From assembly GCF_000400465.1 (NCBI RefSeq), contig NW_008806298.1:1-32000 (forward strand): a stretch of DNA of 32,000 bases. Reading direction: 5' to 3'. Under the pieces are notes generated by a model that made no database searches, was not told the DNA's origin, and was given only the letters and a program-made list of their open reading frames with translations. The translations under genes were made by a program, and so were the position numbers. This stretch comes from Wallemia ichthyophaga EXF-994. Taxonomy: Eukaryota; Fungi; Basidiomycota. Below, in pieces: positions 18,298 through 32,000 of the stretch (its first letter is position 1; every line of letters starts with the position of its first letter).

Positions 18298-19444
18298 ATG
18301 TCCACAGCAGAGAAAGGTGCCGCCAACGACCAAGGCTTCGTCAACGGCGACAATAGCGCCAATGTGCGTGTGACTACAGCCGTGTAACACAAGCTGACAG
18401 CGCTACACAGGCCAACGTATCAAGATTCATAACCCCAGGTGGTCACCCTGCGGATAGCTCTCAGGTGCGTGTTCCCAGGTGTCTTCTCCAGCGCGTGCTC
18501 ACTCCAATCACAGCCTGCGTTCCCTATTTTCCACAGAAAGATTGCTAATCCTTCTCCACTCGGGTGTGTATTTCCTGGGAGCTGAATCGGTGGTGCTGGA
18601 TGTCTGACTTTCCCGTACAGACTGACGGCTTTCGCGACGACCACCTTTATGCTTTCGTAGGTAAATGTGTGGTGTTGCTTGCCCATCTTACACCGCAACA
18701 GACTCTACAACATCCAAACGAGAGGCATCAGTGCACCAAACGTCGTTGTCGGCCCAGCGCTCTTCTACGGTGGACTGTGTCAGCTTCTTGCAGGTGAGTG
18801 AGAGTGATAGTTTGCACTAATACTGCTCACAGTATCTCTAGGAATGTGGGAGTTCACCACAGGTAACACATTCGCTGCAACTGCCTTCTCTACTTATGGT
18901 GGATTCTGGTTGTGAGTGGGGTGATCTAGAGTGTCCTATCAGCTTATAAGACCTTGTTACAGATCTTACGGCGTTATTTACATCCCATGGTTTGGAATCG
19001 AAGCTGCATACGAGGGAGCACCGGATGAGTTAGCTTCAGCGCTCGGTATCTACCTAATTGGATGGTTTATCGGTGAGTGAAGCATGAGAGCAGTCAAAAA
19101 CACCCATGCAAACCCTCTAACGACGCAAATATTCAGTCACGTTCATGTTCTTGGTCGCCTCGCAGAGATCATCACTCGCGCTCTCTGGTGTCTTCTTCTT
19201 CCTGATGATTACCTTTATCTTGCTTGCGGCGGGTGAATTTACTGGATCAGTTGGTGAGTTTATTATGATTTGCTTCTATCTCGCTAAATAATGCTCTTTA
19301 GGCACCACAAAAGCGGGTGGTGTTTTGGGAGCAATAACCGCATTCAATGCTTATTATGTAGCAATGGCTGGACTGCTCACTCCTGACTCAAGTTACTTCA
19401 CACTTCCTACTCTTTCTTTGGACTTTCCTAACAAGAAGAAGTAA
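18298..19444 (+). CDS. ATO1: Gpr1/Fun34/YaaH (ATO/Ady2/SatP) acetate/ammonia transporter, ~245 aa, 9 exons (not visible in the ORF track)
   Basis: Introns at 18364-18410, 18465-18513, 18564-18620, 18657-18701, 18794-18841, 18912-18962, 19073-19136 and 19254-19301. The product contains FITPGG, QPAFPIFHRKIANPSPLGL, FYGGLCQLLAGMWEF..GNTF and YGGFWLS. Confidence 0.93.
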
Positions 19445-21008
19445 TTGGTCGCTATAAGATGTCTCGTGCAACTATTTGAGATAATCACAGCTACTTTACG
19501 ATATGACTCACTAATAATCTTGATCTACAACTTTTAATGAATGTAACATTTTTGTACTTTGATGGCTGCAACTTTTCCTTATTCTTATGCATCTATCACC
19601 TATCTCTATGTTAGAGATCAATCAAATCAAGTAGATGAAATGTTCATAATTAATAGCTATACACCAATTACAACCAATTAAAAGCATTCATAAGCAAATC
19701 CCAAAATGTCCCAAGCAATTCCATGAAGTTTCAAGCAGTTTCAAGATTCTCAACAATGTCTCTCTATTCACTCAGTCAATTAGACCTTTCTTGTCTCTTT
19801 GATCTCAGCTGAGAAGGTGGTGATACTGATTGACATTGGTATTCAGATTCTGATTCAACTACCATGTCCAGGTCTTGATAATCAGAACCTGCATCATCCA
19901 TGACAGAGTTGTCAATAGACACAGTTTCAGACTCAGAATCGTATTCGTACTCTGATTCAGAGTTGCTTAAAACTGATTCTATCACTGATGTTGTCGCCGA
20001 TTCAACAATAGGTTCCACACTAGACTCAATACCTATCTCATCACTACCTTCCCCTTGTTGATAGTTAGTGCTGCCTTCCCAGCTCTGAGTGGTAGATGTC
20101 TGCGCACTATAGAAGCTTGGCGTTGGAGAAGTTTGTTTAAAAAAGTAGATCCACAGGTCATAGTTGTTGTTGAAAATGGTATTTATGAATGGCTGTTTAG
20201 GTATTCTTCAGCCACGAATCCTGAAACACGGAAATCGATGTCTTCATGTTCGAGGTTGTTGAATTAGCGTCAGCCCATATGATTGTACACGGCTTGGCTA
20301 CACTCCTCAGCCCATATAATTGCACTATCTTAGACATGACAGCGATGTTGCTGGTAGAAAGTATGTACATTCCAACGACACGGGTAATGTTTGAGTTATG
20401 TTATTATTGATGTTACAACAATTTCTTTTTGTATCTCTTTCTTCTATCAATTCACCTCCTGTCTCATGATTGCAGCAGCTTCCACACTTTGATTCTCTTG
20501 AATTTTTCACAGCCGTAAAAATATCCTCATTGATCTGATTTTGCCCTTTTTCTGCTTTGTCTTGGTTTCATTTTGATATTCAGAGAGAGCGATGAGTGTA
20601 TTTAGGAATGTTTGTTATTGATAGCTCTCTAGAGCCATTTAGAATCATTATTGTTGCTTTCAACGTGCAAAGCTCCGACAATTGCCGTTGTTAGGTCGCT
20701 TTGTTTCATGAAAATGATTTAGCATAAAGACACTATTTCAAGCATTTAAGATGATAGATAAAGCAATGCGTATGATAATAAGCGTATCCCTGCATCTCAA
20801 ATCGCCTCCATCAGTCACACTTTCAATTACTCAGTACATCTCATCTCACAGCTCACAAAAAGCTCCTAAATATACATACAAGAACACTCAAGTCGCTCAC
20901 ATGTAAATATACACTCAAGCATCACCTTCTCTCCGCTATGTTTACCTAAGTTTTGCTCTTCACTCCAAGCCATCCACTTCGAACCAACTGCGTTTATTCA
21001 AAAAAGGA

Positions 21009-21957
21009 CTAGTTTACAAGTAATGCAGGGTCATTGAATGCGGCTGTAAAGTAAGGGTGTCTGAGTGCGTCCTCACAGCTCAATCTTCTGATGGGGTCGA
21101 ACTGGAGCAGTTTATCGAGGAGATCGATGGCTGGTAGGGTGTCAGCGTGATGTATCAGATAGAACAAAACACCAACCTAACGGATGTGCCTTAGGATAAA
21201 GGGTGTGCCAAGGCACCTTAGGGTAGCGTGGGAAGTTCCTAAGCTGAATTTCCGGGCTCTCAGCAGCGATCCTACGAAGTACGTCGTCTGATGGCGTACC
21301 GATGACCTTGATAATAGCGTTGAGTTGGTCGTTGTTATCTCTACCTCTAAACAGCGGCACGCCAGAGATCATCTCCGCGAGGATGCAGCCGGCACTCCAC
21401 ACATCTATGCTTGTGGAATACGTCTTGGACCCGAGGAGGACGTCTGGCGGTCTGTACCAGAGGGTGACGACCTCATTCGAGAAGGTGTTGACGGGTATAC
21501 CGAATGCTCTAGCGAGACCAAAGTCAGCGAGTTTGAGCTCGCCGCGCTTGTTTATGAGCAGATTTTGTGGCTTGAGGTCGCGATGCAGGACTCGATTCTC
21601 GTGACAGAATCCCGTACCTTTAATTAGCTGGTATGTGAAACTTCTGATGGTGTTAGGCTCCAGTGCACCTCTGTCGCCGTGACTGTCCATGTACTTTTTC
21701 AGATCCTGGTCCATGAACTCGAATACAAGCATCAGCTTAGTTTCTGTGTGTATTACGTCATGCAGCCTGACTATGTTGGGATGTTTGAGCTCCTTCATGA
21801 GAGATATTTCACGTATAGCTGTACTTGGTGTGCCTTCTTCCGCGTCGAGGTGTATTTCCTTAAGTGCGACAATGTCACTCGTGAGCCTCGATCTGCCCTT
21901 GTGGACAGAGGCGTAGGTACCCTCACCTAGCTTCTCGAGTTGTATATAATTCTGCAT
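21009..21957 (-). CDS. PHO85: Cyclin-dependent kinase Pho85 (PSTAIRE), ~300 aa; exons 21957-21177, 21130-21009
   Basis: [61 protein letters not shown] 46-nt intron supplies the C-terminus [14 protein letters not shown]...EDALRHPYF. Confidence 0.96.
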
Positions 21958-22075
21958 ATTTTCAGACCACTGTAATGGTAGTCGTCAAAGAGCACAGCGC
22001 TTCTCAACTGCTGTCAGCTTAGACGCGTCAAGCGATACTGAAATTGGAAAATATTAAAAATTCGGAAATAAAACA

Positions 22076-23064
22076 ATGGACGCAAATGATCAGGATGAGC
22101 AAGAGGTAGAATACTGTATCTGTAAATCTAATGGCGCCGACAATCTGCCAATGATTTTGTGCGAGGGGTGAGTTTGGTGGTATGTGTTGACACACCGGCT
22201 GAAGACACTCACGGCAGCTGCGAAATGTGGTACCATCTTCACTGTCTGGGATTTCAACCTGGAGATGATGAGCTGATCGATGTGTTCGTCTGTCCCGGTT
22301 GCGAAGAGAAGACAGCGCAAAGGACGAGCTGGCGTAGGAAGTGCAGCAGAGAAGACTGCAAACACGCTTCAAGACTGCCATTATCGATATACTGCTCGGA
22401 TGCTTGTGGAATCTACCTGATGAGTTTGAAATTACGTCAGGTGAATATACATCCCGAGTCTTTGGACGACGCAGCAGGTAAGATCGGCAACTACAACAAT
22501 ATTCCTTCGGTGGTTTTTGACGGCGATGGGAACAAGGTTTCCAGTGTAAGTCTTGCCGCTGAATCCAAGAAGGAAGACTGTTTGTCTAAGCTCTCCAAGC
22601 TCGCAAATCAGATAGAAGAATATACCAATCAAATTAGTCTACTCATAAAGCAAGAATCATACCATCAATTGGCGATATCACGCGCTAGTACTCTCTCAAA
22701 CCATTTGCTCACTCTCAACCAGAACACTTCTCCCGTAAAAACAAAGTCGAGAAAGGGAGCCCCACCACCGCCCAAAGGATATTGTGGATTCGACTATCGA
22801 CTGCTAGCAGATGACGATGAGTGGCCGGAATTCAACTCGCAGGACGTAGAAGCCATTCCCGTCGAGACGGATGGACTACTCTGCAACCTCAAAGAAAGCG
22901 CGTGCTCACGCCACAAGGAATGGAAGAAGATGATTGAGTATAAATTACAAGTTCATAGGTCTACTCTAGAAGCCAAGCAATTCAAATTACAATCAAGGCA
23001 GCAGGAATTAGTTTTGAAGGTGCGACATTTTGATAAAATTATTCAAATTAGCTTTAATATCTGA
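22076..23064 (+). CDS. SPP1: PHD-finger COMPASS subunit Spp1/Cps40 (CFP1-like), ~312 aa; exons 22076-22167, 22218-23064
   Basis: PHD finger YCIC...MILCEGCEMWYHLHC...FVCPGC, followed by KCSREDC...YCSDACG and a C-terminal C...C.RHKEW block. The 50-nt intron keeps the frame. Confidence 0.85.
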
Positions 23065-24055
23065 ATTGATTATGTTGCTGTTGTTGTTGTTGGTAGAATT
23101 GCTGCTGCTGGTGGTGGATGAAGCGTTGGTGCTGTTCAGGTGTGAGAATGGGTGTTTGTGGTGTTTGCATGGATTGTACGGGTTGCACACTTTGCGCATG
23201 TTGTGGCTGTTGAGCATGTTGCTGCGCGAGATGTTGCTGCTGTTGAGTGAATGCCATCTGCTGCTGTTGTGCCATAAGCATCTGTTGCTCTTCGATAGCC
23301 TTCAATTCACTCGCTTGCTGCTGCTGCTGTTGTTGGTGTTGCTGTTGTTGCATTATATACGCCCTCTGCTGCTCCATCTGCAACGCTGCTTCAGCTTCGG
23401 CTTCCAATTCCGCATCTCTCTTAAGCTGCTCAGCGTGTTGTACCTGCTGCTGTCTCGTGAATGCACTCGTCGATGGCTCGTGTCCGTAGTTGTGCACGTC
23501 TACGTCACCGTCGACCCTCTCAGTGCAAAATCCACGCTGTCTAAGTACAGCGTCTCTTACACTATCAGCCACCGCTCTATTTTCATCCAGTACAGCTGTT
23601 TTATTGAGAACGTCTTCAATTGGTGCTGATTTGAGTGGTACGACATCTTCGAAATCCAAGTCCTTTGAGGCGGGTGAGTTGGGCATCTCACTGGCAACTT
23701 GGAGACACTCACAACTTCACCCATCAGTACAACGTTCTCTCCTCTAATCAAGTATAACCCGCGCGGTATATCTGCGTATTCATCCTCTGCGTGTATTCGC
23801 TCAACTGCATCATTCAGGACCAAATTGGCTGGGAATTGATCGTATGAGATTGGCGTACCTATGCTAAGATGAGAAAACCCACCGAATTGATCATATGATC
23901 TCAGCACGCCGAAAATCTTCCTGCCATCTCTAAGTGCCACCAGCATCTTCTCTTTGCGGGAGTGTGAGGAGAGTTATTATGAGATAAAAAGCAAACTAAC
24001 TATCCACGCAGTTAAGCAGCTGCCCGGACGTCGTGAACGGCACCAGTGCTTCCAT
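23054..24055 (-). CDS. LSM1: Sm-like protein Lsm1 with a Q-rich C-terminal extension, ~282 aa; exons 24055-24001, 23951-23883, 23828-23713, 23662-23054
   Basis: [38 protein letters not shown]..AVERI...RGLYLIRGENVVLMGEVDLD is the Lsm1 Sm1/Sm2 signature. Three introns (49, 54, 50 nt) keep the frame. Confidence 0.93.
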
Positions 24056-24347
24056 AGGCTAATTGGGTGTTGGGTGGGAGTGAATGAGAAGAGCAGTCAC
24101 TTAGCAAAATCAATAAGCGCGTAGATATTGAAAATCAACTTAAATTTATTTCATTTCACATAAAATCTATAAAATACAAGTCTAAATGGCTAAATAGCCT
24201 TGTTAAATGTGCCGCAGGACATTGACGCATACAATCATGCGGTAGATGCGAAGATCACCGTTTGTCGCGTCACCCAAGTCCCGTTGCATTTTTTGCTCTC
24301 TGACGCATATACGACTGGCATGGTAACTGACTGCTCAACCGAAGGAG

Positions 24348-24432
24348 CTATCTATCAACCAGCGCCTGTGATTTGTTAGCTTTGTGCTGCTTCCTTGATT
24401 TGTATATTTCGACTCACTTTTTGAAGCGTCAT
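24348..24432 (-). other. Cryptic spliced micro-ORF (MTLQK|ALVDR*) with a canonical 52-nt intron
   Basis: TATAAA at 24479-24474, ATG at 24432, GTGAGT donor at 24417, GCTAAC branch point at 24380-24375, CAG acceptor at 24366. No recognisable product. Confidence 0.4.
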
Positions 24433-24618
24433 TCTTCTTTGCGTTAAAGAGGTAATTCTTAGCGGAGCTCAAATTTATAATCCGCGAAAATCTTCACTCT
24501 AGACACCTTTCTCGGTCATCATAGCGCAGGGCGGAGTAACGCATCCATTAACTCCTTTCCAGCGATCCTGAACTCTGTCGCTAATCACACGCCACCCATC
24601 TTTCTGACATCACCGACC

Positions 24619-25942
24619 ATGACTTCGCATACCAAAATAACGGATCCAAGCATATACACCAGATTACCCAGCCTAGCAGCAATGTATGATTATTTCACCA
24701 CAGATGATCCACACATGCTTCATCCAGATATCCGTGTACCCACAGCGGTACTCGTAGCCTATCTAGCCTTAATGGTACTCTGCGTCCTGAGTTTAGCAAT
24801 CCCACTGCCATCGCGTCAGCTCAAGATTATAAATCGCGGCCTAATGCTACCCGCAATCCTTTCCATATCAGCGTACATCTACCAAAAGTGTCTCTACTTA
24901 GACACAGCCGGAAACAGATTCTCTGTACCTAGCACCGCAGTAGTTAAGTATTAGCCGCGCACATCACTTCAAGCCCTTTAACGCTACTGCAGGCTTCACC
25001 TTGCGTGCGATCGACACACTCCTATTTTCAGGCGACCCACACAAGACATTCTTTCGTATAGACAAGCCCCACCCGCCCCGCACACTGCGCGAGGGGCTAG
25101 CATACTCTTTTTCCTTCTGGTTCACCTTCAGGGGCATCAAGTGGAATTGGAAATCGCGCAAGACGCCTACTTGGAGTGAGAATAACATTCCCACCCGCAC
25201 GCAATTTATACGCATGCACTTGCACAATTTGGCTTGGCGCTACGTCTTCATGGACGCGCTGGAGACGTTTCTTCGCAAGACCGGTTTCCTAGCATACCCG
25301 CCCCTGCTGATGAATGACTTGTCTTTGTTATCGCCACTGAGAAATGCAGCTGGTTTGGCACACGGTGTCCTTCTGTGGCAGGTCATTGATATGACTTACT
25401 CACTCTTTGTCATCCCTTGCGTCCTTCTTCGCATCAGTCATGTCGACGAATGTCCCCCTCAGTTTGGTCGCTTAGCAGACGCTACGACTCTAGCTGCCTA
25501 CTGGGCAACCCTATGGCATAGCAATTGGAAAAAGCCTTTCGTTGGTGTGTCATTAGGTGTTACTAGATTCTTCAAGTTACCCGCCATGTTCGGGGTTTTT
25601 GGTACTTTCATTATTAGCGGTATTTTTCATTCTCTTATTGCCTTAGCTGCGCATGGAGGTGATATACGAAGTTGGTCAGGCGCTGGTGCGATGCTCTCAT
25701 TCGCCGTTCAACCTATTGGACTCATTGTAGAGAGGTGTTTCATGTCTCACATTCTTCCACTCCTTCCAATTTCTGTCAGGAGATCCAAATTATTCAAGTC
25801 GTTATCTTATCTTTGGGTCACACTCTGGCTGTCCACCACAGCTAGTTTCGCATTCGACGAAGTCAACCAAGCCGGTTTAATGGCGAAACCACTTCTACCC
25901 TTCTCGCCTGTGCGATACATCCTCGATCAGATATATGCTTAA
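24619..25942 (+). CDS. MBOAT_2/wax-synthase-like membrane acyltransferase (Tri7-like), ~424 aa; exons 24619-24924, 24974-25942
   Basis: Multi-TM protein with FRGIKWNW, PPQFG, YWATLWHS.W and GTFIISGIFH (putative catalytic His). A 49-nt intron joins the two ORFs in phase 0. Confidence 0.8.
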
Positions 25943-25977
25943 ATAATAACCATTCTATAGATCTTTCTAAGGCTTTT

Positions 25978-28441
25978 CTACAATTTCAATCCTGATGCAT
26001 TCTTGCCTTCTTCACTATTACCCTTCTTCTTCTTAGCGTTGGCCTCTCCCTTTCCAACAACAGTGACTCCTTTGCCCTGTGAAAGTTTCTTGAGAGCATC
26101 ACGCTTCTCATCTCCCACTGACATTCTCTGTTTGCGCGATTTGTCGTCGACCACATTTGCAATCTTAGCTCTATCTTTAGCGCGGGATTTACGAATCCTG
26201 CTACGTTGAGCACGTTTCTCCTCAGGTGCCATCTCTTCCTTAGACACATTACCGAATCGCGGACCGCTGTAAACTTCCTCAGGAGCTGCGCGACTAGCGT
26301 TCGATTGTGCAGTCGGCAGTGCATTCTCCAGACTAATAGATGGGGTGTTAGAAACTGTCTCAATCTGCGCCTTTGGTGCTGGTGGAGTGAAGTGGGCGTT
26401 AGATAGCGCGTCAAGTTTCGAAGAGAGCTGGTTCCACATTTCATCTATCTCTCGGTGCTCCTTGGTAAGTTTTTCGTCATCATTTATAGTGTTGCCCGTG
26501 TGCTCATTTGCGTAGAGATCTCCTAAACCTTGCGACGATTGTTGGTCACTCAACTCGAAAAGCCTAGATGGGAGGAATGGTTTTTCGTTCACTTGACTCA
26601 CCCTCTCCACATCGTTGAAGTGCTCATTTATTATACGCTGCTTGATTAAATCTTCGAGCGTCGATTGCTTCTCTTCAGTATTCTCAGGCGTAATTTTGTT
26701 GATGGTTTCGAAATCTAAATCTTCAGCTAACAGACTGTTTTCCGGGCGCGCTTTAGACGAGACTTCTCCTTTCAACGTCCATTCCTTCGCTGCGACATTC
26801 TCATCTTCGAGATCGGCTATTTGACGTGCGAGGGCTGTTCGTCTGCGACCATGAGCAGATGCAGGTGCTAGGGTAGTGTGAGCATTGATGTAAATATTAA
26901 AATGGTAGGAGGACCCACCTTCATCTCCATCTTCTTCCTCTTCTTCCTCGGCGAAGAGATCAGAGTTGAACTTCTCCATAGTAGCGTTCTCTGGATCATC
27001 TCCAGCTTCACCTTCCTCTTCCTCTTCCTCGTTTTCCTCAGCTTGCTCATTGTCGTCGCTGTTTTCCTCGTGGTCCATCTCCTCGTCAAGATCCTCCGCC
27101 TTCTCACCAAGAGCGTCCTCATCAAGCATATCGAGATCTCCATTCTCAAGATCGTCTGCATCGTCGTCGAAAGCCTCATCACCTTCCTCATCATCATCAG
27201 CGCTATCATCATCGTCATCGTCGCGCATGCTGCCTTTGCCTGGAAAATTGTGAGATGGACAAGTACAAGAGTGTGTCACCCACTTTTGTTCTTAATTTTT
27301 TGCACTTTGACGGAATCATCGAAGCGTACAGAAGATCTCCTTTTCTCCCTTTTCTCCTTCTTATCCTTCTTTTCTTTCTTATCCTTCTTATCCTTCTTAT
27401 CTTTCTTGGCATTGGGTTGTGTATCAGCGAGAGAGTAGCTTGGAGGTTTGGCATGAGACCATCCTTTACGAGGTGGAGCGAAAAAGTCGTTGAAGAAGAC
27501 GTCGTTTGCATTCTCGTCGTCATTCTCTAGTTGAGCTGCAGCCTCAGGGGAGAAGATGTCGACGTCCTCCTCTTCTTCACTATCTTCGTCCTCATCATTC
27601 CTCCTTCGCAGACGATCGCTGACCTCTTGATCTTCTGTCATTCTGTTGAAATCGTCTATGGAAAAGAAAGCATCATCAAGCCCCCAGACATCCTTCTTGG
27701 GCGGTTTGCCTGTGCTCTTCTTTCCTGCGGTCTCCTCTTCATCACTGCTATCTTGTTCTTCGTCGTTGAGTTTCTGATAACTGATTTCACCAATTGTAGG
27801 GTCGTCTTCACCATCAAAACTTGATTGGGAGCTACTTTCGTCCTCCTCGGCGTCATCGCTCCCGTCATCATCTAACAATCCCTCTGCTCTCAAAGCTTCA
27901 ATCTCTTCTGGTGAGAGATCATCCAAATCGATGTCTTCCTCTTCCTCATCTTCCTCGCCGTCGATAGCATCCTCGTCATTATCGTCTGGAATATCAGTCT
28001 GATCACTTGCGTCTACCAGTCTCTCCACCAAATCGCACATAACCTTGGCTCTGAGATCGAGTTGGTGGTAGATTTGATCATCGTTGAAGCCATCGATAAA
28101 GAGCTCATCTAAGGGAGTTTCTTCGATCTCCATATGCTCTTCTTGATCCGCACCGCCTCTCTTCCTTTTCTGCTGCTTCTTTTGGCGAGTTTCAACAGCG
28201 GGAATTTTGAAAGTTTGGAGGATATCGTTGATGTACTTGAGAGAATTCTTTTCGTCTTTAAGTCCTGTGGCCTTGTCAGTGCCGTGTTGGGCGAGTGCAA
28301 ATACTCCCACGCACCACGATCGAATAATTCTTTACTGGCTTCGAGTGAGGAGTGCTTGAGCTCATCGTCGCCGTTTACGAAAGCGCCTGATTTTGTGGAT
28401 AATATATTTATGTAGTTATCCAATATTCCATTCCGTGCCAT
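25978..28441 (-). CDS. MPP10: U3 snoRNP/SSU processome subunit Mpp10, ~772 aa; exons 28441-28315, 28264-27284, 27239-26919, 26867-25978
   Basis: L.IDGF..DQIY.QLDLR, LDD.FFSIDDFN, WTLKGE....RPENSLL.EDLDFE, LEDLIK.RI....F.DV.R, KLDALSNAHFTP and APEEV motifs; very acidic composition. Confidence 0.94.
27340..27408 (-). repeat. Imperfect 9-nt coding tandem repeat (KKD/KKE)n in Mpp10
   Basis: Repeated cttatcctt-like units on the + strand encode KKDKKDKKDKKEKKDKKEKREKRR. Confidence 0.75.
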
Positions 28442-28557
28442 CTTCGCGGTACTTGATAGAGATGTGAGGGAGGTGAGACGCGGCGTAAACCCAATCGCTT
28501 TCTTAATTTGATTTGCGTTCCTCTAAGAAGCGTACATCTTAATCTCCAACTTCCAGC

Positions 28558-29707
28558 ATGTCATCAATCAGAGAAGCGACGCACGCAGGCGCCTGGTACT
28601 CAGCCAATCGTGGGTATATCCAACGAATCCGCTCGCTTCTAATCGCCACACAGCATCCACGCTCACCAATCAGCTAACTGGCTGGTTCAGCGATGCAGCC
28701 GACGCAGGCGTGACCAGCGATCCGAAATGCAGAGTGGTAATTGCACCGTCAGTCTCTTCGGCTAACGAAGCCCTGCGCCTCCAAAGCTAACCCTGCACAC
28801 AGCCACGCTGGCTTATCTTTCAGCGGTCGCACAGCAGCGCACGCATACTCTGCGGCTACGCTGAGCAACTACAAGCGCATCATTATGCTGGGGCCCAGCC
28901 ACCACGTCTATCTCGACTCCTGCGCCCTGTCCCCTTTCTCCTCCTACGATACGCCTTTCGGTCCGCTCAGCGTAGATAAGGGAGTGAATGACGATCTGGC
29001 CAAGTGCGGCGCGTTCAAACGCATGAGCAGATCTACCGATGAGGATGAGCACAGCTTCGAAATGCATACTCCGTTTATTAAGACCTTATCTAGGGAGTGG
29101 GTACTTTTTCCGACACATCCGGCCATTTCACTCATAATGCAAAAGACACGATATAAAAATCGTCCCAATCCTCATTGGCAGTCTCTCGCACGAGCAGGAA
29201 GTGGAGTTTGGCGCTTATCTGTCCAAGTACATCAACGACCCTGAGACACTCTTCGCTATTTCGTCTGATTTCAGTCATTGGTGGGTGCTTTCGACACAAA
29301 ACGCTTTATCCTGACGTCTCATGCCTAGGGGATCGAGATTCAGATACACCTACTACAGACCATCGCCCTCCTCAGACGGACGCAGACTAGCGAAATCAGA
29401 CAGCACACATAAAGACGAAGATGCTGTACATGAGAGCATAACAGGGTTAGACCACGAGGCATGGGATATACTCAGTGGTGCCCTCTCCAACCCCCAACGC
29501 TCACATGAAAACTTTACCAAGTATCTGCGCAAGACAGGCAACACCATCTGTGGAAGACATGCGTTTGGCGTGTTGCTGGGTGCAATCAGACATGCAAACA
29601 AAGATTATGACGGTCATGTGCAATGGACGCACTACTCTCAATCCTCCAAGGCACTTTCCGCCAACGATAGCAGCGTCAGCTATTCTGGAGGCTATATGGC
29701 ATTTTGA
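28558..29707 (+). CDS. MEMO1: Memo1/Mho1 family protein (AmmeMemoRadiSam protein B), ~317 aa; exons 28558-28609, 28654-28747, 28803-29096, 29146-29280, 29329-29707
   Basis: REATHAGAWYS, IAPHAGLSFSG, LGPSHH, DEDEHSFEMH, ISSDFSHWGSRF, NTICGRH..GVLL and YSQSS.......SSVSY motifs; four frame-preserving introns. Confidence 0.94.
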
Positions 29708-29985
29708 TCACGTTTCCTGGATATGTCAATGTAATGTGTAATTCAAATTTATATCTATACAAGAGTTGTTTGGCTACAGAACTATAGCTGCTACAAGTTA
29801 ATTTCGTAATTTAGGATAAGTTTGTATCAACGAGATTCCATTGAGTCACAAATGAGTATTATAAATAAGTTTGCTTTATCTGGTAAGTTGCTGAGTCTAT
29901 TGTAATTTTAATTGAGTATGCGCTGAAAGTAGTGAAAAGTTTGACTTTAATGGTAAGATTTAAAGTTTCCACTAATGCATAATGT

Positions 29986-31113
29986 CTACTTAGTATGGAC
30001 GCTCTTCATAAGAGCGCTCAATGCTTCACTTCCAAATTTACCCTTAGGATAGCATATGAAGAGTGGTTGATGTTTTACATCGAATTTCTCCCTGAATGCA
30101 CCGCGATTGGTGAGTCCAGCAGCCGAAACGATAGAGTTGTACATCTTGGACAACCATGCCATCCTCATACTGCTTAGATTGTGCGTCGGAATAAGCTGAT
30201 CAGCGGCACTTATTCCGAAGCTACAATAGAGCACGCCTTGCGCTTGGAGTGACTCGAGGACATGATGCAACTGGTGCTCGCTCACGCCTCGAGGCGCGTT
30301 AGGGAACACTATCGAGTGTTCGATTTGATGACAACTTGATGAAATTTTCGATAAAACGGTGAATCCCCATATCTAGGATGTGCGTTAGAGCGATACAAAC
30401 AAGTTGAACTCCTACCCACTTTCCTAGAATCTCCATGACGCGCGTAGAAAAGACGACGATGATTAAGATCGACCCATGGTTGCAGGTCTTGAGTAGCGAT
30501 CTGGATACCGGTACGCTTCTTCTTCCAATCGTGAATACCTTGTTCAACAGCCGCTTTGTCGCTGTCTGAGATTTCGTGCACCTCATCCACTACAATTCCT
30601 TCTTTTATCGATCTGCGTACATTGCTACGAACATCCCTAGAACGCATGAGGTTGACAGTGGATAAGTCGACAATGTCCTAATAGAAACAGTTCAGCTGCA
30701 ATACACCTATTTAACGCGCAACACACCTGTCTTATACACGATAAACTCGACCAATTGAGATCAGGCTCAGACAAAACGCGCTCAAATTCCTCCCCGACGC
30801 ATGTCCACACACAAACTAGCCCATTGGACTGGCAGAAATGGATAAACTTTCTCGCGACAGTTGCCCAGCGTGATTTGTCGCAAATGGGAGATCCCCATGC
30901 AATGACATAGTCCTTGTGCTTCGTGTATCCCTGTATACCTTCCCTAACGTTGCCCGTGTCATCCTCGTTATCGTCCTCGGATGAGCTGCTCTCCAGACCG
31001 TTAGCATCCATTTTGGTGAACTCCTTCCAAATTTCATAACGCTTATCCAACCACGAAGGACCGGCTGGCTGGTTGTAGCTGTTGCTGATACTATCTGCGA
31101 TATCTGACTTCAT
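29986..31113 (-). CDS. Free-standing DUF2156 (LPG_synthase_C/aminoacyl-tRNA transferase) protein resembling the ErdS transferase domain, ~343 aa; exons 31113-30727, 30677-30420, 30372-29986
   Basis: The spliced product contains SWLDKRYEIW, WGSPICD, LNWSSLSCI, W...R.G.QI....LQPWVD..HRR.FYA, HSIVFPNAPRGVSE, SFG and FREKF......LFICYP. I recognise these blocks from fungal DUF2156 domains. Two canonical introns (49, 47 nt) fuse three ORF fragments in frame. Confidence 0.78.
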
Positions 31114-31436
31114 TTGGTATCTGCGCTGTTTAATGTGAAGATACAAATTTCGGCTCCATCGAATACGTGCTAATTTTTTTGCCTATGATTCATACGTGAT
31201 ACGCAGTACCGTGCAAACGAAGAATTTCAAAGTCTTTGAAGAAATCGTATTTATTTTGCTGCTCTCTCGCACACTCAATTCCAATCCCACTCCCATAAGG
31301 ATAAATTTTCCTTTAGTTCCTCCCAATGACTTCATCTCACCTCGATCAGCACAGTGATTATCCGAAGAGCTTGGCTGTTTGGCGGACGCATTGGAATAAA
31401 TTTACTTTTGCTCATTTTCTACATGAGTTTTTCAAG

Positions 31437-31643
31437 TTAATTTTCCCCGTTCATTCCTGCACCAGGGTACCCATTGGAGTAATGGTAACTGGCCGGTTAG
31501 CAATTCGCAATAATGTAACCTGTGAAGTTATGTCCGCTAGCCAGCTACATGCGCCCAACTATATCCCCACATATTTATAATCAAGCTGCTTACGCGATTG
31601 CAGTTGGTGCCTCGCCAGGCTCAGCACCGCTATTTATAGTCAT
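31437..31643 (-). other. Possible spliced 33-aa micro-ORF
   Basis: ATG 31643, GTAAGC donor 31593, GCTAAC branch point and CAG acceptor 31489 give MTINSGAEPGEAPTAIAYHYSNGYPGAGMNGEN*. The intron (105 nt) is long for this locus. Confidence 0.3.
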
Positions 31644-31797
31644 AGGATGGTAGACAGAAAAACACTTCTAATATCTTCTTATTGCTTCATAAAATTCTTT
31701 ACACTACCATATGGGAAAGCAAAAAAGCAAGAAAATTTATTTAAAACGAAGAATATTGTACTTGTGTTTAGAATGAATATCATGAGTAATAGCACCA

Positions 31798-32000
31798 CTA
31801 CTGATTACCACCAGCACCAGCCGCTTCTTTCTCCTTCTCCTCCCTCATCTCAGTTTCTTGGTCTGGCGTAGCCGGGATATCAAATCTGTCTCTGACCTTC
31901 TCGAACTCTTTAAGCATCTTTCTGCGTGCACCCACAGCTGCTACACCCTTTGCTTCCAAATCTGCTCCACACATATTCACCATTTCCTTCCAGTTCGACT
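31798..32000 (-). CDS. VTS1: 3' end of a SAM-domain RNA-binding protein (Vts1/Smaug-like); runs off the window
   Basis: NWKEMVNM..ADLEAKGVAAVGARRKMLKEFE matches the Vts1 SAM C-terminal signature. Confidence 0.8.
   Translation of the reverse strand, partial: SNWKEMVNMCGADLEAKGVAAVGARRKMLKEFEKVRDRFDIPATPDQETEMREEKEKEAAGAGGNQ

What the first reader, a model, noticed from the sequence alone, without database searches (positions are those of the whole stretch)
29986..31113. Stand-alone ErdS-like DUF2156 aminoacyl-tRNA transferase with no AspRS domain: candidate new tRNA-dependent lipid aminoacylation system
Seen: a three-exon, ~343-aa soluble protein that begins right at the DUF2156 domain boundary and carries an acidic insert (ESSSSEDDNEDD). 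Only ~680 bp separate it from the VTS1 stop, so there is no room for an aminoacyl-tRNA synthetase domain, and no alpha/beta-hydrolase lies next to it. Known: fungal ErdS is an AspRS-DUF2156 fusion that makes ergosteryl-3beta-O-aspartate and is often paired with the hydrolase ErdH; the free-standing ErgS makes ergosteryl-glycine and was described in ascomycetes; the domain is related to the MprF/aaPGS transferase. Inference (family call from remembered motifs, no search run): a basidiomycete-type fungus encodes a split or AspRS-independent transferase that takes aa-tRNA from the cytosolic pool, possibly with a different amino acid or sterol/lipid acceptor. This could be a membrane adaptation.
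Basis: partly seen in the sequence, partly recalled or inferred. Interest (0 to 1): 0.8.

Follow-up and report, generated by a model that had tools for sequence, protein, structure and literature searches.

The report
Free-standing ErdS-like aminoacyl-tRNA transferase gene
This is a real, conserved gene of the salt-loving fungus Wallemia ichthyophaga for a small soluble enzyme of the family that moves amino acids from tRNA onto membrane sterols; it belongs to a large, so far undescribed basidiomycete branch that lacks the usual fused tRNA synthetase and has alanine where the proposed catalytic histidine sits.

Summary
On the minus strand, 29986-31113, there is a three-exon gene (introns of 49 and 47 nt, GT..AG) for a 343-aa protein. 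It passes Pfam PF09924/DUF2156 (61.6 bits) and matches the transferase domain of A. fumigatus ErdS (PDB 9w9e-g, E=1e-37). It is the annotated 'hypothetical protein' of Wallemia ichthyophaga.

There is no AspRS and no ErdH-type hydrolase in the 32-kb window or in 10 kb beyond it.

It is not a one-off. Its nearest relatives are about 60 clusters of free-standing proteins. All the named ones are from Basidiomycota: Tulasnella, Agaricales, Microbotryomycetes and Wallemia. This branch is distinct from AspRS-fused ErdS. It has Ala instead of the proposed general base His795, and GTSE instead of GAIE in GNAT II. The CCA-pocket residues and most sterol-pocket residues are kept.

The AlphaFold model (pLDDT 92.6) has the double-GNAT fold of aminoacyl-phosphatidylglycerol synthases.

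Most likely it is a tRNA-dependent sterol aminoacyl transferase that draws aa-tRNA from the cytosolic pool. The amino acid cannot be predicted.

Two tests could not be run: a tree that includes ErgS sequences, and a genome-wide search of Wallemia for ErdS and ErdH. It is a new variant of a known kind, of moderate to high interest.

The parts
30727..31113 (-). Exon 1 (aa 1-129): start codon, N-terminal sterol-pocket motif, acidic loop, first GNAT half
   Evidence: The start is shared with the W. mellicola orthologue.
30678..30726 (-). Intron 1, 49 nt, GT..AG, phase 0
   Evidence: The W. mellicola gene has an intron at the same codon, with a diverged sequence.
30420..30677 (-). Exon 2 (aa 130-215): positively charged alpha(+) helix and CCA-pocket motif
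30373..30419 (-). Intron 2, 47 nt, GT..AG, phase 0
29986..30372 (-). Exon 3 (aa 216-343 plus stop codon 29986-29988): GNAT II core
31039..31077 (-). aa 13-25, YNQPAGPSWLDKR. This corresponds to ErdS Y637...R649, the N-terminal strand of the sterol pocket. Y13, S20, W21, D23 and R25 are kept.
   Evidence: Alignments. Residue roles come from PMC13219428.
30958..30993 (-). aa 41-52, ESSSSEDDNEDD: acidic/serine insert in a loop between two strands. It is Wallemia-specific.
   Evidence: pLDDT is 60-79 in this stretch. The insert is absent from ErdS and from the other free-standing relatives.
30603..30644 (-). aa 141-154, RSRDVRSNVRRSIK: the alpha(+) helix between the two GNAT folds, the tRNA-binding element
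   Evidence: The model has a helix at 143-154. R150 and R151 align with ErdS R752 and R753.
30492..30527 (-). aa 180-191, WKKKRTGIQIAT: CCA-pocket motif. W180, R184, G186 and Q188 are conserved. A190 sits where ErdS has His795, and T191 where ErdS has Leu.
30274..30294 (-). aa 242-248, PRGVSEH: GNAT II loop. G244 and E247 are nearly invariant across the family. S246 marks the subfamily (ErdS has Ile).
30085..30096 (-). aa 308-311, FREK: corresponds to ErdS F913, R914 (oxyanion stabiliser) and K916
   Evidence: PMC13219428
31114..31797 (.). 684-bp intergenic/promoter region up to the stop codon of the upstream Vts1-type gene. It is too short to hold an AspRS domain.

Best explanation
The gene encodes a soluble, free-standing aminoacyl-tRNA transferase with the double-GNAT (DUF2156) fold. 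It belongs to a distinct subfamily, widespread in Basidiomycota, that is sister or basal to the transferase domain of ErdS.

Proposed mechanism (inferred):
1. The positively charged helix (aa 141-154) and the W180/R184/G186/Q188/F308/R309/K311 pocket bind the acceptor end of an aminoacyl-tRNA. That tRNA is charged by an ordinary cytosolic synthetase and taken from the free pool.
2. The pocket built from Y13, S20, W21, D23, R25, E109, C126, W197 and Q231 holds ergosterol or a close sterol.
3. The aminoacyl group is transferred to the sterol 3-beta-OH, giving a steryl-amino acid.

The proposed general base of ErdS (His795) is Ala in this subfamily, the next residue is Ser/Thr rather than Leu, and the GNAT II loop reads GTSE rather than GAIE. 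The chemistry around the ester is therefore arranged differently. The amino acid transferred is open and need not be Asp.

Shown here: gene structure, purifying selection, family, fold, absence of any fusion partner, subfamily membership and residue pattern. Inferred: tRNA dependence, the sterol acceptor and the in-trans supply of aa-tRNA.
For: Family and fold:
- PF09924 scores above its cut-off.
- The ErdS transferase domain is the best solved relative: E=1e-37 for the single sequence and 390 bits with the family profile, against 60-78 bits for bacterial aaPGS/MprF.
- The AF2 model has pLDDT 92.6 and pTM 0.89. Foldseek top hits are A-PGS 4v34/4v35, L-PGS 4v36 and MprF at TM 0.70-0.75, then FemX.

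Residues:
- All nearly invariant family residues are present (P76, W180, R184, Q188, G244, E247, G268, K311).
- Residues that reduce or abolish ErdS activity when mutated are mostly kept: W785, R789, G791, Q793, F913, K916, Q836, S644, W645 and D647 (with for the mutagenesis).

Subfamily:
- Wallemia scores 314 bits against an HMM of the free-standing basidiomycete proteins that was built without it, 227 bits against the ErdS-domain HMM and 175 bits against the bacterial HMM.
- Grouping with ErdS appears in 0.5% of NJ bootstraps.
- 63 of the 150 representative hits fall in this subfamily. None carries an AspRS piece, and 42 of the 47 with a readable motif have Ala at the His795 site. In the ErdS class, 37 of 44 have His.
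- The longer members have no other Pfam domain.

Selection: intron positions are conserved, and pN is 0.13 against a saturated pS.

Precedent for in-trans supply: the ErdS transferase domain can use Asp-tRNA made by a separate AspRS, and ErgS uses Gly-tRNA from a separate GlyRS (PMC7334510; PMC8913301).
Against: - His795Ala strongly lowers ErdS activity (R<0.5 against 1.42 for wild type), so the natural Ala could mean low or different activity.
- K790 is Thr and K838 is Glu in Wallemia. K790E and K838E weaken ErdS.
- The isolated ErdS transferase domain is poorly active in yeast and inactive in A. oryzae.
- Bootstrap support for placing Wallemia inside the Ala-type clade is only 47% (75% for the clade without Wallemia).
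- Specificity cannot be read from sequence (PMC8913301).
- No lipid or enzyme data exist for any member.
Confidence: 0.55

Rival explanations
1. It is a functional equivalent of ErdS that works without fusion. It takes Asp-tRNA(Asp) made by the ordinary cytosolic AspRS and makes ergosteryl-aspartate, so the product is the known one.
For: ErdS is the closest characterised relative. Sterol-pocket residues are shared. The ErdS transferase domain can capture Asp-tRNA supplied in trans.
Against: - The protein does not group with ErdS domains (0.5% of bootstraps, and 88 bits lower on the ErdS HMM).
- The fixed differences lie at the active-site motif (H to A, L to S/T, I to S).
- Both types occur in one order, Agaricales: Lentinula has ErdS, and Marasmius, Flammula, Pholiota and Dendrothele have free-standing proteins. 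This suggests paralogues with separate roles.
- The unfused ErdS domain is inefficient.
Confidence: 0.15
2. It is an orthologue of the ascomycete ErgS and makes ergosteryl-glycine from Gly-tRNA(Gly).
For: It has the same free-standing architecture. One basidiomycete 'ErgS' (Trichosporon oleaginosus) is reported, and basidiomycete sampling in that study was three species.
Against: - ErgS is reported as about 20% identical to the ErdS transferase domain, whereas this protein is 30-33% identical to ErdS domains.
- Every named member of the subfamily is a basidiomycete. The only ascomycete free-standing hit, Saitoella, falls outside the fungal clade.
- This is indirect: no ErgS sequence was available for a tree.
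Confidence: 0.1
3. It aminoacylates something other than a sterol, such as a glycerolipid as bacterial aaPGS do, or another hydroxyl or amine acceptor.
For: The fold equals that of A-PGS and L-PGS. The GTSE loop is the bacterial state. The nearest prokaryotic relatives are free-standing bacterial proteins of unknown acceptor. The missing His could reflect a different nucleophile.
Against: Ten of the sixteen residues that the ErdS study picked in its sterol cavity are kept or conservatively replaced, including Q836, S644 and W645, which had the largest effects. The family profile scores ErdS five times higher than any aaPGS.
Confidence: 0.1
4. It is a catalytically weak or dead relative that binds tRNA or sterol and has a regulatory or scaffolding role.
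For: Ala sits at the proposed general-base position, and K790T and K838E are also present.
Against: The other catalytic and CCA-pocket residues, including R309 (R914) and K311 (K916), are strictly kept across about 60 diverged clusters. Bacterial relatives also lack His at this site (21 of the 37 readable bacterial motifs have Tyr, 11 have His), so His is not required by the family. Purifying selection is strong.
Confidence: 0.07
5. It is an annotation artefact: the 3' part of a full ErdS whose AspRS exons lie elsewhere or were missed.
For: An earlier survey noted that many 'stand-alone' DUF2156 hits are truncated ErdS models. Several truncated ErdS fragments also turned up here.
Against: - There is an in-frame stop upstream of the ATG and only 684 bp to the next gene.
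- tblastn finds no AspRS in the window or in 10 kb upstream, in two species.
- W. mellicola has the same N-terminus and the same synteny.
- The subfamily signature differs from ErdS.
Confidence: 0.03

Closest known systems
ErdS, ergosteryl-3beta-O-L-aspartate synthase (A. fumigatus; PDB 9w9e/9w9f/9w9g)
   Same: The transferase (ATT/DUF2156) domain is the best solved match (E=1e-37). The two share the N-terminal YG..SW..RY.IW motif, the alpha(+) helix, the CCA-pocket residues W, R, G, Q, F, R and K, and most sterol-pocket residues.
   Different: - This protein has no AspRS domain and no long N-terminal helix, so tRNA cannot be handed over within the molecule and must come from the pool.
- His795 is Ala, Leu796 is Thr, the GAIE loop reads GVSE, K790 is Thr and K838 is Glu.
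- There is no divergent erdH neighbour.
- It falls in a separate subfamily by HMM score and by tree.
ErgS, ergosteryl-3beta-O-glycine synthase (free-standing DUF2156 of Ascomycota)
   Same: It is free-standing and soluble, and would rely on an aa-tRNA made by a separate synthetase.
   Different: ErgS is reported only in Ascomycota (plus T. oleaginosus) and is about 20% identical to the ErdS domain. This subfamily is basidiomycete-wide and about 30-33% identical to ErdS domains.
Bacterial aminoacyl-phosphatidylglycerol synthases (MprF C-terminal domain: A-PGS 4v34/4v35, L-PGS 4v36)
   Same: The double-GNAT fold is the same (TM 0.70-0.75), and both belong to Pfam family PF09924.
   Different: Sequence identity is only 12-18%. 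This protein has no N-terminal flippase or membrane domain. Its pocket residues are those of the fungal sterol enzymes.
Bacterial free-standing ~325-aa DUF2156 proteins (uncharacterised; e.g. loci L005, L007)
   Same: They are free-standing and of similar length, with the same W...R.G.Q and GTSE motifs. They are the nearest prokaryotic relatives (21-28% identity).
   Different: They have Tyr or His at the 795 site and Trp instead of Arg at the R914 site. They lack the fungal N-terminal sterol-pocket motif. They sit in intron-less, operon-like contexts.
FemX-type peptidoglycan aminoacyl transferases
   Same: The fold is a distant version of the same double-GNAT fold (TM about 0.55), and both bind the CCA end of an aa-tRNA.
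   Different: The acceptor is a peptidoglycan precursor amine, and there is no detectable sequence similarity.

Membership tests
DUF2156 / double-GNAT aminoacyl-tRNA transferases (PF09924) | Significant match to the PF09924 profile | tested here: met
   61.6 bits against a cut-off of 27.5, aa 63-323
DUF2156 / double-GNAT aminoacyl-tRNA transferases (PF09924) | Two GNAT folds joined by a positively charged helix | tested here: met
   The AF2 model has pLDDT 92.6. The helix at 143-154 carries R143, R146, R150, R151 and K154. Foldseek gives TM 0.70-0.75 to A-PGS, L-PGS and MprF.
DUF2156 / double-GNAT aminoacyl-tRNA transferases (PF09924) | Family-wide conserved residues of the CCA/ester pocket | tested here: met
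   P76, W180, R184, Q188, G244, E247, G268 and K311 are all present.
DUF2156 / double-GNAT aminoacyl-tRNA transferases (PF09924) | tRNA-dependent transfer of an aminoacyl group | not testable with these tools
   This needs an enzyme assay.
ErdS (Erg-Asp synthase) | AspRS domain fused N-terminally to the transferase domain | tested here: not met
   The protein is 343 aa and starts at the domain boundary. tblastn finds no AspRS in the window or in 10 kb upstream.
ErdS (Erg-Asp synthase) | Transferase domain groups with ErdS domains | tested here: not met
   227 bits on the ErdS HMM against 314 on the free-standing HMM. The protein groups with ErdS in 0.5% of bootstraps.
ErdS (Erg-Asp synthase) | His795 (proposed general base) and the KQVHLTE motif | tested here: not met
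   Ala190, in the motif GIQIATQ
ErdS (Erg-Asp synthase) | Sterol-pocket residues of GNAT I and the GNAT I/II interface | tested here: met
   Y13, S20, W21, D23, R25, E109, C126, W197 and Q231 are kept, and E798 is Asp. Four differ: T641-T643 are A, G and P, and K838 is Glu.
ErdS (Erg-Asp synthase) | Divergently transcribed erdH (alpha/beta-hydrolase) neighbour | tested here: not met
   The neighbours are a Vts1-type gene and Memo. No Abhydrolase family appears within 10 kb on either side, or in the window.
ErgS (Erg-Gly synthase) | Free-standing DUF2156 protein without aaRS or membrane domain | tested here: met
ErgS (Erg-Gly synthase) | Membership of the ErgS phylogenetic clade | tested here: inconclusive
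   No ErgS sequence could be retrieved. Two word-index searches failed to bring any in, and no supplements were held for the papers. Indirectly, identity to ErdS is higher than that published for ErgS.
ErgS (Erg-Gly synthase) | Gly-tRNA(Gly) specificity, Erg-Gly product | not testable with these tools
   This needs biochemistry.
MprF (bifunctional flippase/synthase) | N-terminal multi-pass membrane flippase domain | tested here: not met
   There is no hydrophobic segment (maximum KD19 0.96). NCBIfam MprF scores 18.9 bits against a cut-off of 600.

The most novel reading that the evidence does not exclude
The Ala-type free-standing proteins of Basidiomycota, this Wallemia gene among them, are a third class of fungal steryl-amino-acid synthase. 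They make a conjugate that is neither Erg-Asp nor Erg-Gly, by a mechanism that does not use the His general base proposed for ErdS. They represent the unfused, bacterial-like ancestral state from which the AspRS fusion (ErdS) arose.
Probability: 0.3. Interest if true: 0.8.

Novelty: new variant of a known kind. Interest (0 to 1): 0.6.

Why it matters
tRNA-dependent sterol aminoacylation in eukaryotes rests on two enzymes: ErdS in Dikarya and ErgS, described as ascomycete-only. The papers held here state that free-standing transferases are absent from Basidiomycota apart from one species, and they ask where the AspRS fusion came from.

This gene shows that a free-standing, ErdS-like transferase is conserved under selection in Wallemia. 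It also shows that this is one of about 60 diverged clusters across Agaricomycotina, Pucciniomycotina and Wallemiomycetes, with a consistent change at the proposed catalytic histidine.

That gives three directly testable questions:
1. Is there a third steryl-amino acid?
2. Is His795 really the general base?
3. Did ErdS evolve by fusing an AspRS to such a free-standing enzyme?

Several members score below the Pfam threshold, which may explain why domain-based surveys overlooked the group. A link to salt tolerance in this extreme halophile is possible, but nothing here supports it.

Tried and rejected
- Word-index homologue searches. The single-sequence search found only Wallemia and one fragment. 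The search with the Saitoella free-standing protein returned nothing. The search with a 38-sequence profile returned 11 hits, none from Ascomycota. ErgS sequences were therefore never obtained, and no Wallemia ErdS could be looked for by name.
- Supplements of the three key papers are not held.
- Wallemia genome-wide search for ErdS or ErdH: none of the collections on offer holds fungal genomes, so this was not testable.
- 'Truncated ErdS model': rejected.
- 'Split ErdS with an adjacent AspRS': rejected.
- Membrane protein or MprF: rejected.
- A fusion partner in the longer relatives, as a hint to the amino acid: none found, only low-complexity inserts.
- Spatial clustering of the subfamily-specific positions: the model's coordinates are not exposed to scripts.
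- Foldseek could not return ErdS, because its PDB copy predates the release of that entry.
- tRNA genes in the window: none.
Full report
**What is there.**
On the minus strand a start codon at 31113 opens a reading frame interrupted by two short introns: 30726-30678 (49 nt) and 30419-30373 (47 nt), both GT..AG and phase 0. The frame closes at 29986. The spliced CDS is 1032 nt and gives 343 aa. An in-frame stop lies 24 codons upstream of the ATG. The previous gene on the same strand is a Vts1/SAM-type gene in the public gene calls, and it ends at 31798, 684 bp away. The string ESSSSEDDNEDD is residues 41-52.

**Whose gene it is.**
The protein is the 'hypothetical protein E3P91_00192' of Wallemia ichthyophaga, differing at one residue (K2Q). 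The window is 99.26% identical to a contig of assembly GCA_004918235.1. W. mellicola has a 77%-identical orthologue in the same gene order: FGGY/PMI/Vts1, then this gene, then Memo (convergent), Mpp10 and MBOAT_2. Both introns sit at the same codons while their sequences have diverged completely. Synonymous sites are saturated (pS 0.85), whereas only 13% of non-synonymous sites differ. The gene is real and under purifying selection.

**Family and fold.**
- Pfam PF09924 (DUF2156, 'LPG_synthase_C') matches at 61.6 bits, against a cut-off of 27.5. NCBIfam's MprF and LysX models give only traces.
- Among solved structures the only single-sequence hits are the three A. fumigatus ErdS entries, 9w9e, 9w9f and 9w9g. 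At E=1e-37, residues 66-337 align to ErdS 668-942, and a second short stretch (12-33) aligns to ErdS 636-657. The protein therefore begins where the ErdS transferase domain begins.
- A family profile scores ErdS at 390 bits and bacterial aaPGS/MprF at 60-78 bits.
- An AlphaFold2 model built on a 38-sequence alignment is confident (pLDDT 92.6, pTM 0.89). Only the acidic loop (residues ~36-55) dips, to pLDDT 60-79.
- Foldseek against the PDB returns A-PGS (4v34/4v35), L-PGS (4v36) and MprF at TM 0.70-0.75, then FemX. That PDB copy predates the ErdS release.
- There is no transmembrane segment.

**No partner domains or genes.**
tblastn with the AspRS part of a basidiomycete ErdS finds nothing in the 32-kb window. 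It also finds nothing in the four fetched loci, each of which holds 10 kb of upstream flank, in W. ichthyophaga and W. mellicola. No alpha/beta-hydrolase is among the called genes within 10 kb on either side, or among window ORFs of 150 aa or more. The window's other genes are ordinary housekeeping genes: Ytp1, SNO/Pdx2, a cNMP-binding protein, SPRY, FHA, HAD, Spt6, a kinase, MBOAT_2, Mpp10 and Memo.

**Relatives.**
An exhaustive phmmer search of 1.84 billion representative proteins gave 403 hits at E<=1e-3 and 33 at E<=1e-30.
- The best full-length hits are free-standing proteins, not ErdS fusions. Wherever a name exists, they are from Basidiomycota: Tulasnella, Flammula, Pholiota, Marasmius, Dendrothele, Pseudohyphozyma, Rhodotorula, Phenoliferia and a Microbotryomycetes species.
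- AspRS-fused ErdS proteins follow at 30-33% identity: Laetiporus, Lentinula, Filobasidium, Acaromyces, Ceraceosorus, Tilletiopsis, Tilletia and a dothideomycete.
- Below them lies a large group of ~325-aa proteins. Two fetched loci show these to be bacterial. Both genes are intron-less; one lies beside nuoN/M/L/K and the other beside an IS200-type transposase.

**A distinct subfamily.**
- In a neighbour-joining tree of 72 domains, the eukaryotic proteins (apart from the two outliers P0113 and P0115/Saitoella) separate from the bacterial ones in 100% of bootstraps.
- The free-standing basidiomycete proteins form a clade in 75% of bootstraps without Wallemia and 47% with it. Wallemia groups with ErdS domains in 0.5%.
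- An HMM of the free-standing group, built without Wallemia, scores the Wallemia protein at 314 bits. The ErdS-domain HMM gives 227 bits and the bacterial HMM 175.
- Five alignment columns are fixed differently in the two fungal groups. Given as Wallemia position, free-standing state, then ErdS state, they are: 190 Ala/His; 191 Ser or Thr/Leu; 225 Ile/Leu; 246 Ser/Ile (GTSE against GAIE); 305 Arg/Lys.
- Across all 150 listed representatives, 63 fall in the free-standing class. None has an AspRS fragment, and 42 of the 47 with a readable motif have Ala. In the ErdS class 37 of 44 have His. Of the 37 bacterial motifs that could be read, 21 have Tyr and 11 have His.
- The longer members (up to 665 aa) contain no other Pfam domain. 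Several fall at or below the PF09924 threshold, so domain-based surveys would miss them.
- Both types occur within Agaricales, which argues for paralogues rather than lineage-specific loss of AspRS.

**Reading the residues against the ErdS structure paper (PMC13219428).**
- The CCA-pocket residues whose mutation cripples ErdS correspond in Wallemia as follows: W785, R789, G791, Q793, F913 and K916 are W180, R184, G186, Q188, F308 and K311, and R914 is R309.
- K790 is Thr.
- His795, proposed as the general base that deprotonates the sterol 3-OH, is Ala190.
- The alpha(+) helix keeps R752/R753 as R150/R151 and adds R141, R143, R146 and K154.
- Of the 16 residues the authors selected in the sterol cavity, Y637, S644, W645, D647, R649, E712, C728, W802 and Q836 are identical, and E798 is Asp. 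T641-T643 are Ala-Gly-Pro, and N677, E731 and K838 differ.
- Q836 (mutation abolishes activity) and S644 (strongest of the other effects) are both kept.

This supports a sterol acceptor and an aa-tRNA donor by inference. It also points to a differently arranged catalytic centre. Bacterial relatives lack the His as well, so the family does not require it.

**Mechanism proposed.**
The enzyme binds a cytosolic aminoacyl-tRNA through the alpha(+) helix and the GNAT II pocket. It holds ergosterol or a close sterol in the GNAT I/II cavity and forms a steryl-3-beta-O-aminoacyl ester. With no fused synthetase it cannot use the 'swinging-arm' handover shown for ErdS. It must work like ErgS, on aa-tRNA released by a separate synthetase. 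The amino acid cannot be named: the authors of the ErgS paper state that DUF2156 specificity cannot be predicted from sequence. The fixed changes next to the ester site make a specificity different from ErdS plausible, but that is inference.

**Literature.**
Full-text searches find three primary papers on fungal steryl-amino acids.
- They describe ErdS in Dikarya and ErgS as ascomycete-only, with one basidiomycete exception, after mapping three basidiomycetes.
- The first paper mentions that 23% of hits were 'stand-alone' DUF2156 and 'often' truncated ErdS.
- None describes a basidiomycete-wide free-standing clade or the His-to-Ala signature. The ErgS paper explicitly expects further cryptic transferases.

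Within what I could search the subfamily is undescribed, but subscription literature was not covered.

**Limits.**
- I could not obtain any ErgS sequence. 'Not an ErgS orthologue' therefore rests on identity levels and on the taxonomy of named hits.
- I could not search whole Wallemia genomes for ErdS or ErdH.
- The trees are neighbour-joining with moderate support.
- No biochemical data exist for any member.

**Verdict.**
The family and architecture calls are right. 'Split ErdS' and 'unique to this fungus' are not supported. A new amino acid or acceptor remains an open but well-posed hypothesis. I rate it a new variant of a known kind, interest 0.6.

Noticed in passing
P0020 (Planoprotostelium fungivorum, 631 aa), domain aa 312-612: A fungus-eating amoeba encodes an ErdS-like DUF2156 domain that falls inside the fungal clade (100% bootstrap for that clade). 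The site aligned with His795 is Phe. The literature says such enzymes occur only in Dikarya. Transfer from fungal prey is possible.
   Followed up: partly
P0115/P0156 (Saitoella complicata): This early-diverging ascomycete has a free-standing 348-aa DUF2156 protein, which another gene model merges with a pps1 phosphatase. It lies outside the fungal clade and has a divergent CCA-pocket motif (F, S, A and K instead of W, R, G and Q).
   Followed up: partly
L007:113-1129 and L005:2700-3689: The nearest prokaryotic relatives of the fungal enzymes are free-standing ~325-aa bacterial DUF2156 proteins, not membrane-fused MprF. One lies beside nuoN/M/L/K and one beside an IS200-type transposase. This suggests the unfused state is ancestral.
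   Followed up: partly
P0025, P0052, P0109, P0151: Several members of the free-standing basidiomycete subfamily score below the PF09924 gathering cut-off (26.5 and 25.1 bits) or not at all. Pfam-based censuses would therefore miss them.
   Followed up: yes
window 25001-25942 (+): A gene of the MBOAT_2 family (membrane-bound O-acyltransferases) lies 4 kb from the transferase gene, separated from it by Memo and Mpp10. The arrangement is the same in W. mellicola. It may be coincidence, but both are lipid-acylating enzymes.
   Followed up: partly
L001:1-9316; L002:3670-9356: The public gene models upstream merge FGGY sugar kinase, phosphomannose isomerase and Vts1/SAM domains into one product of 1569 aa. 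In W. ichthyophaga the model also takes in kinase and WD40 domains and reaches 2314 aa. This is probably mis-merging of neighbouring genes.
   Followed up: no
window 19968-32000 vs L001: The window is 99.26% identical to GCA_004918235.1 contig SPOE01000002.1, and the protein differs at residue 2 (K against Q). The window therefore comes from another strain of W. ichthyophaga.
   Followed up: yes
window 30958-30993 (-), aa 41-52: The Ser/Asp/Glu-rich insert is present in both Wallemia species and in metagenomic relatives (P0003, P0004), but not in other genera. From general knowledge, runs of S-x-x-D/E resemble casein-kinase-2 sites. Its function is unknown.
   Followed up: partly
window 19000-21000: GC content falls to 39-40%, against about 47% elsewhere in the window, and there is no ORF of 150 aa or more. 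Only short acidic ORFs are present.
   Followed up: no
window 25978-28310 (-): The Mpp10 homologue is split over two overlapping ORFs, 25978-27279 and 27276-28310. This is most simply explained by an intron or a frame change at about 27.28 kb.
   Followed up: no
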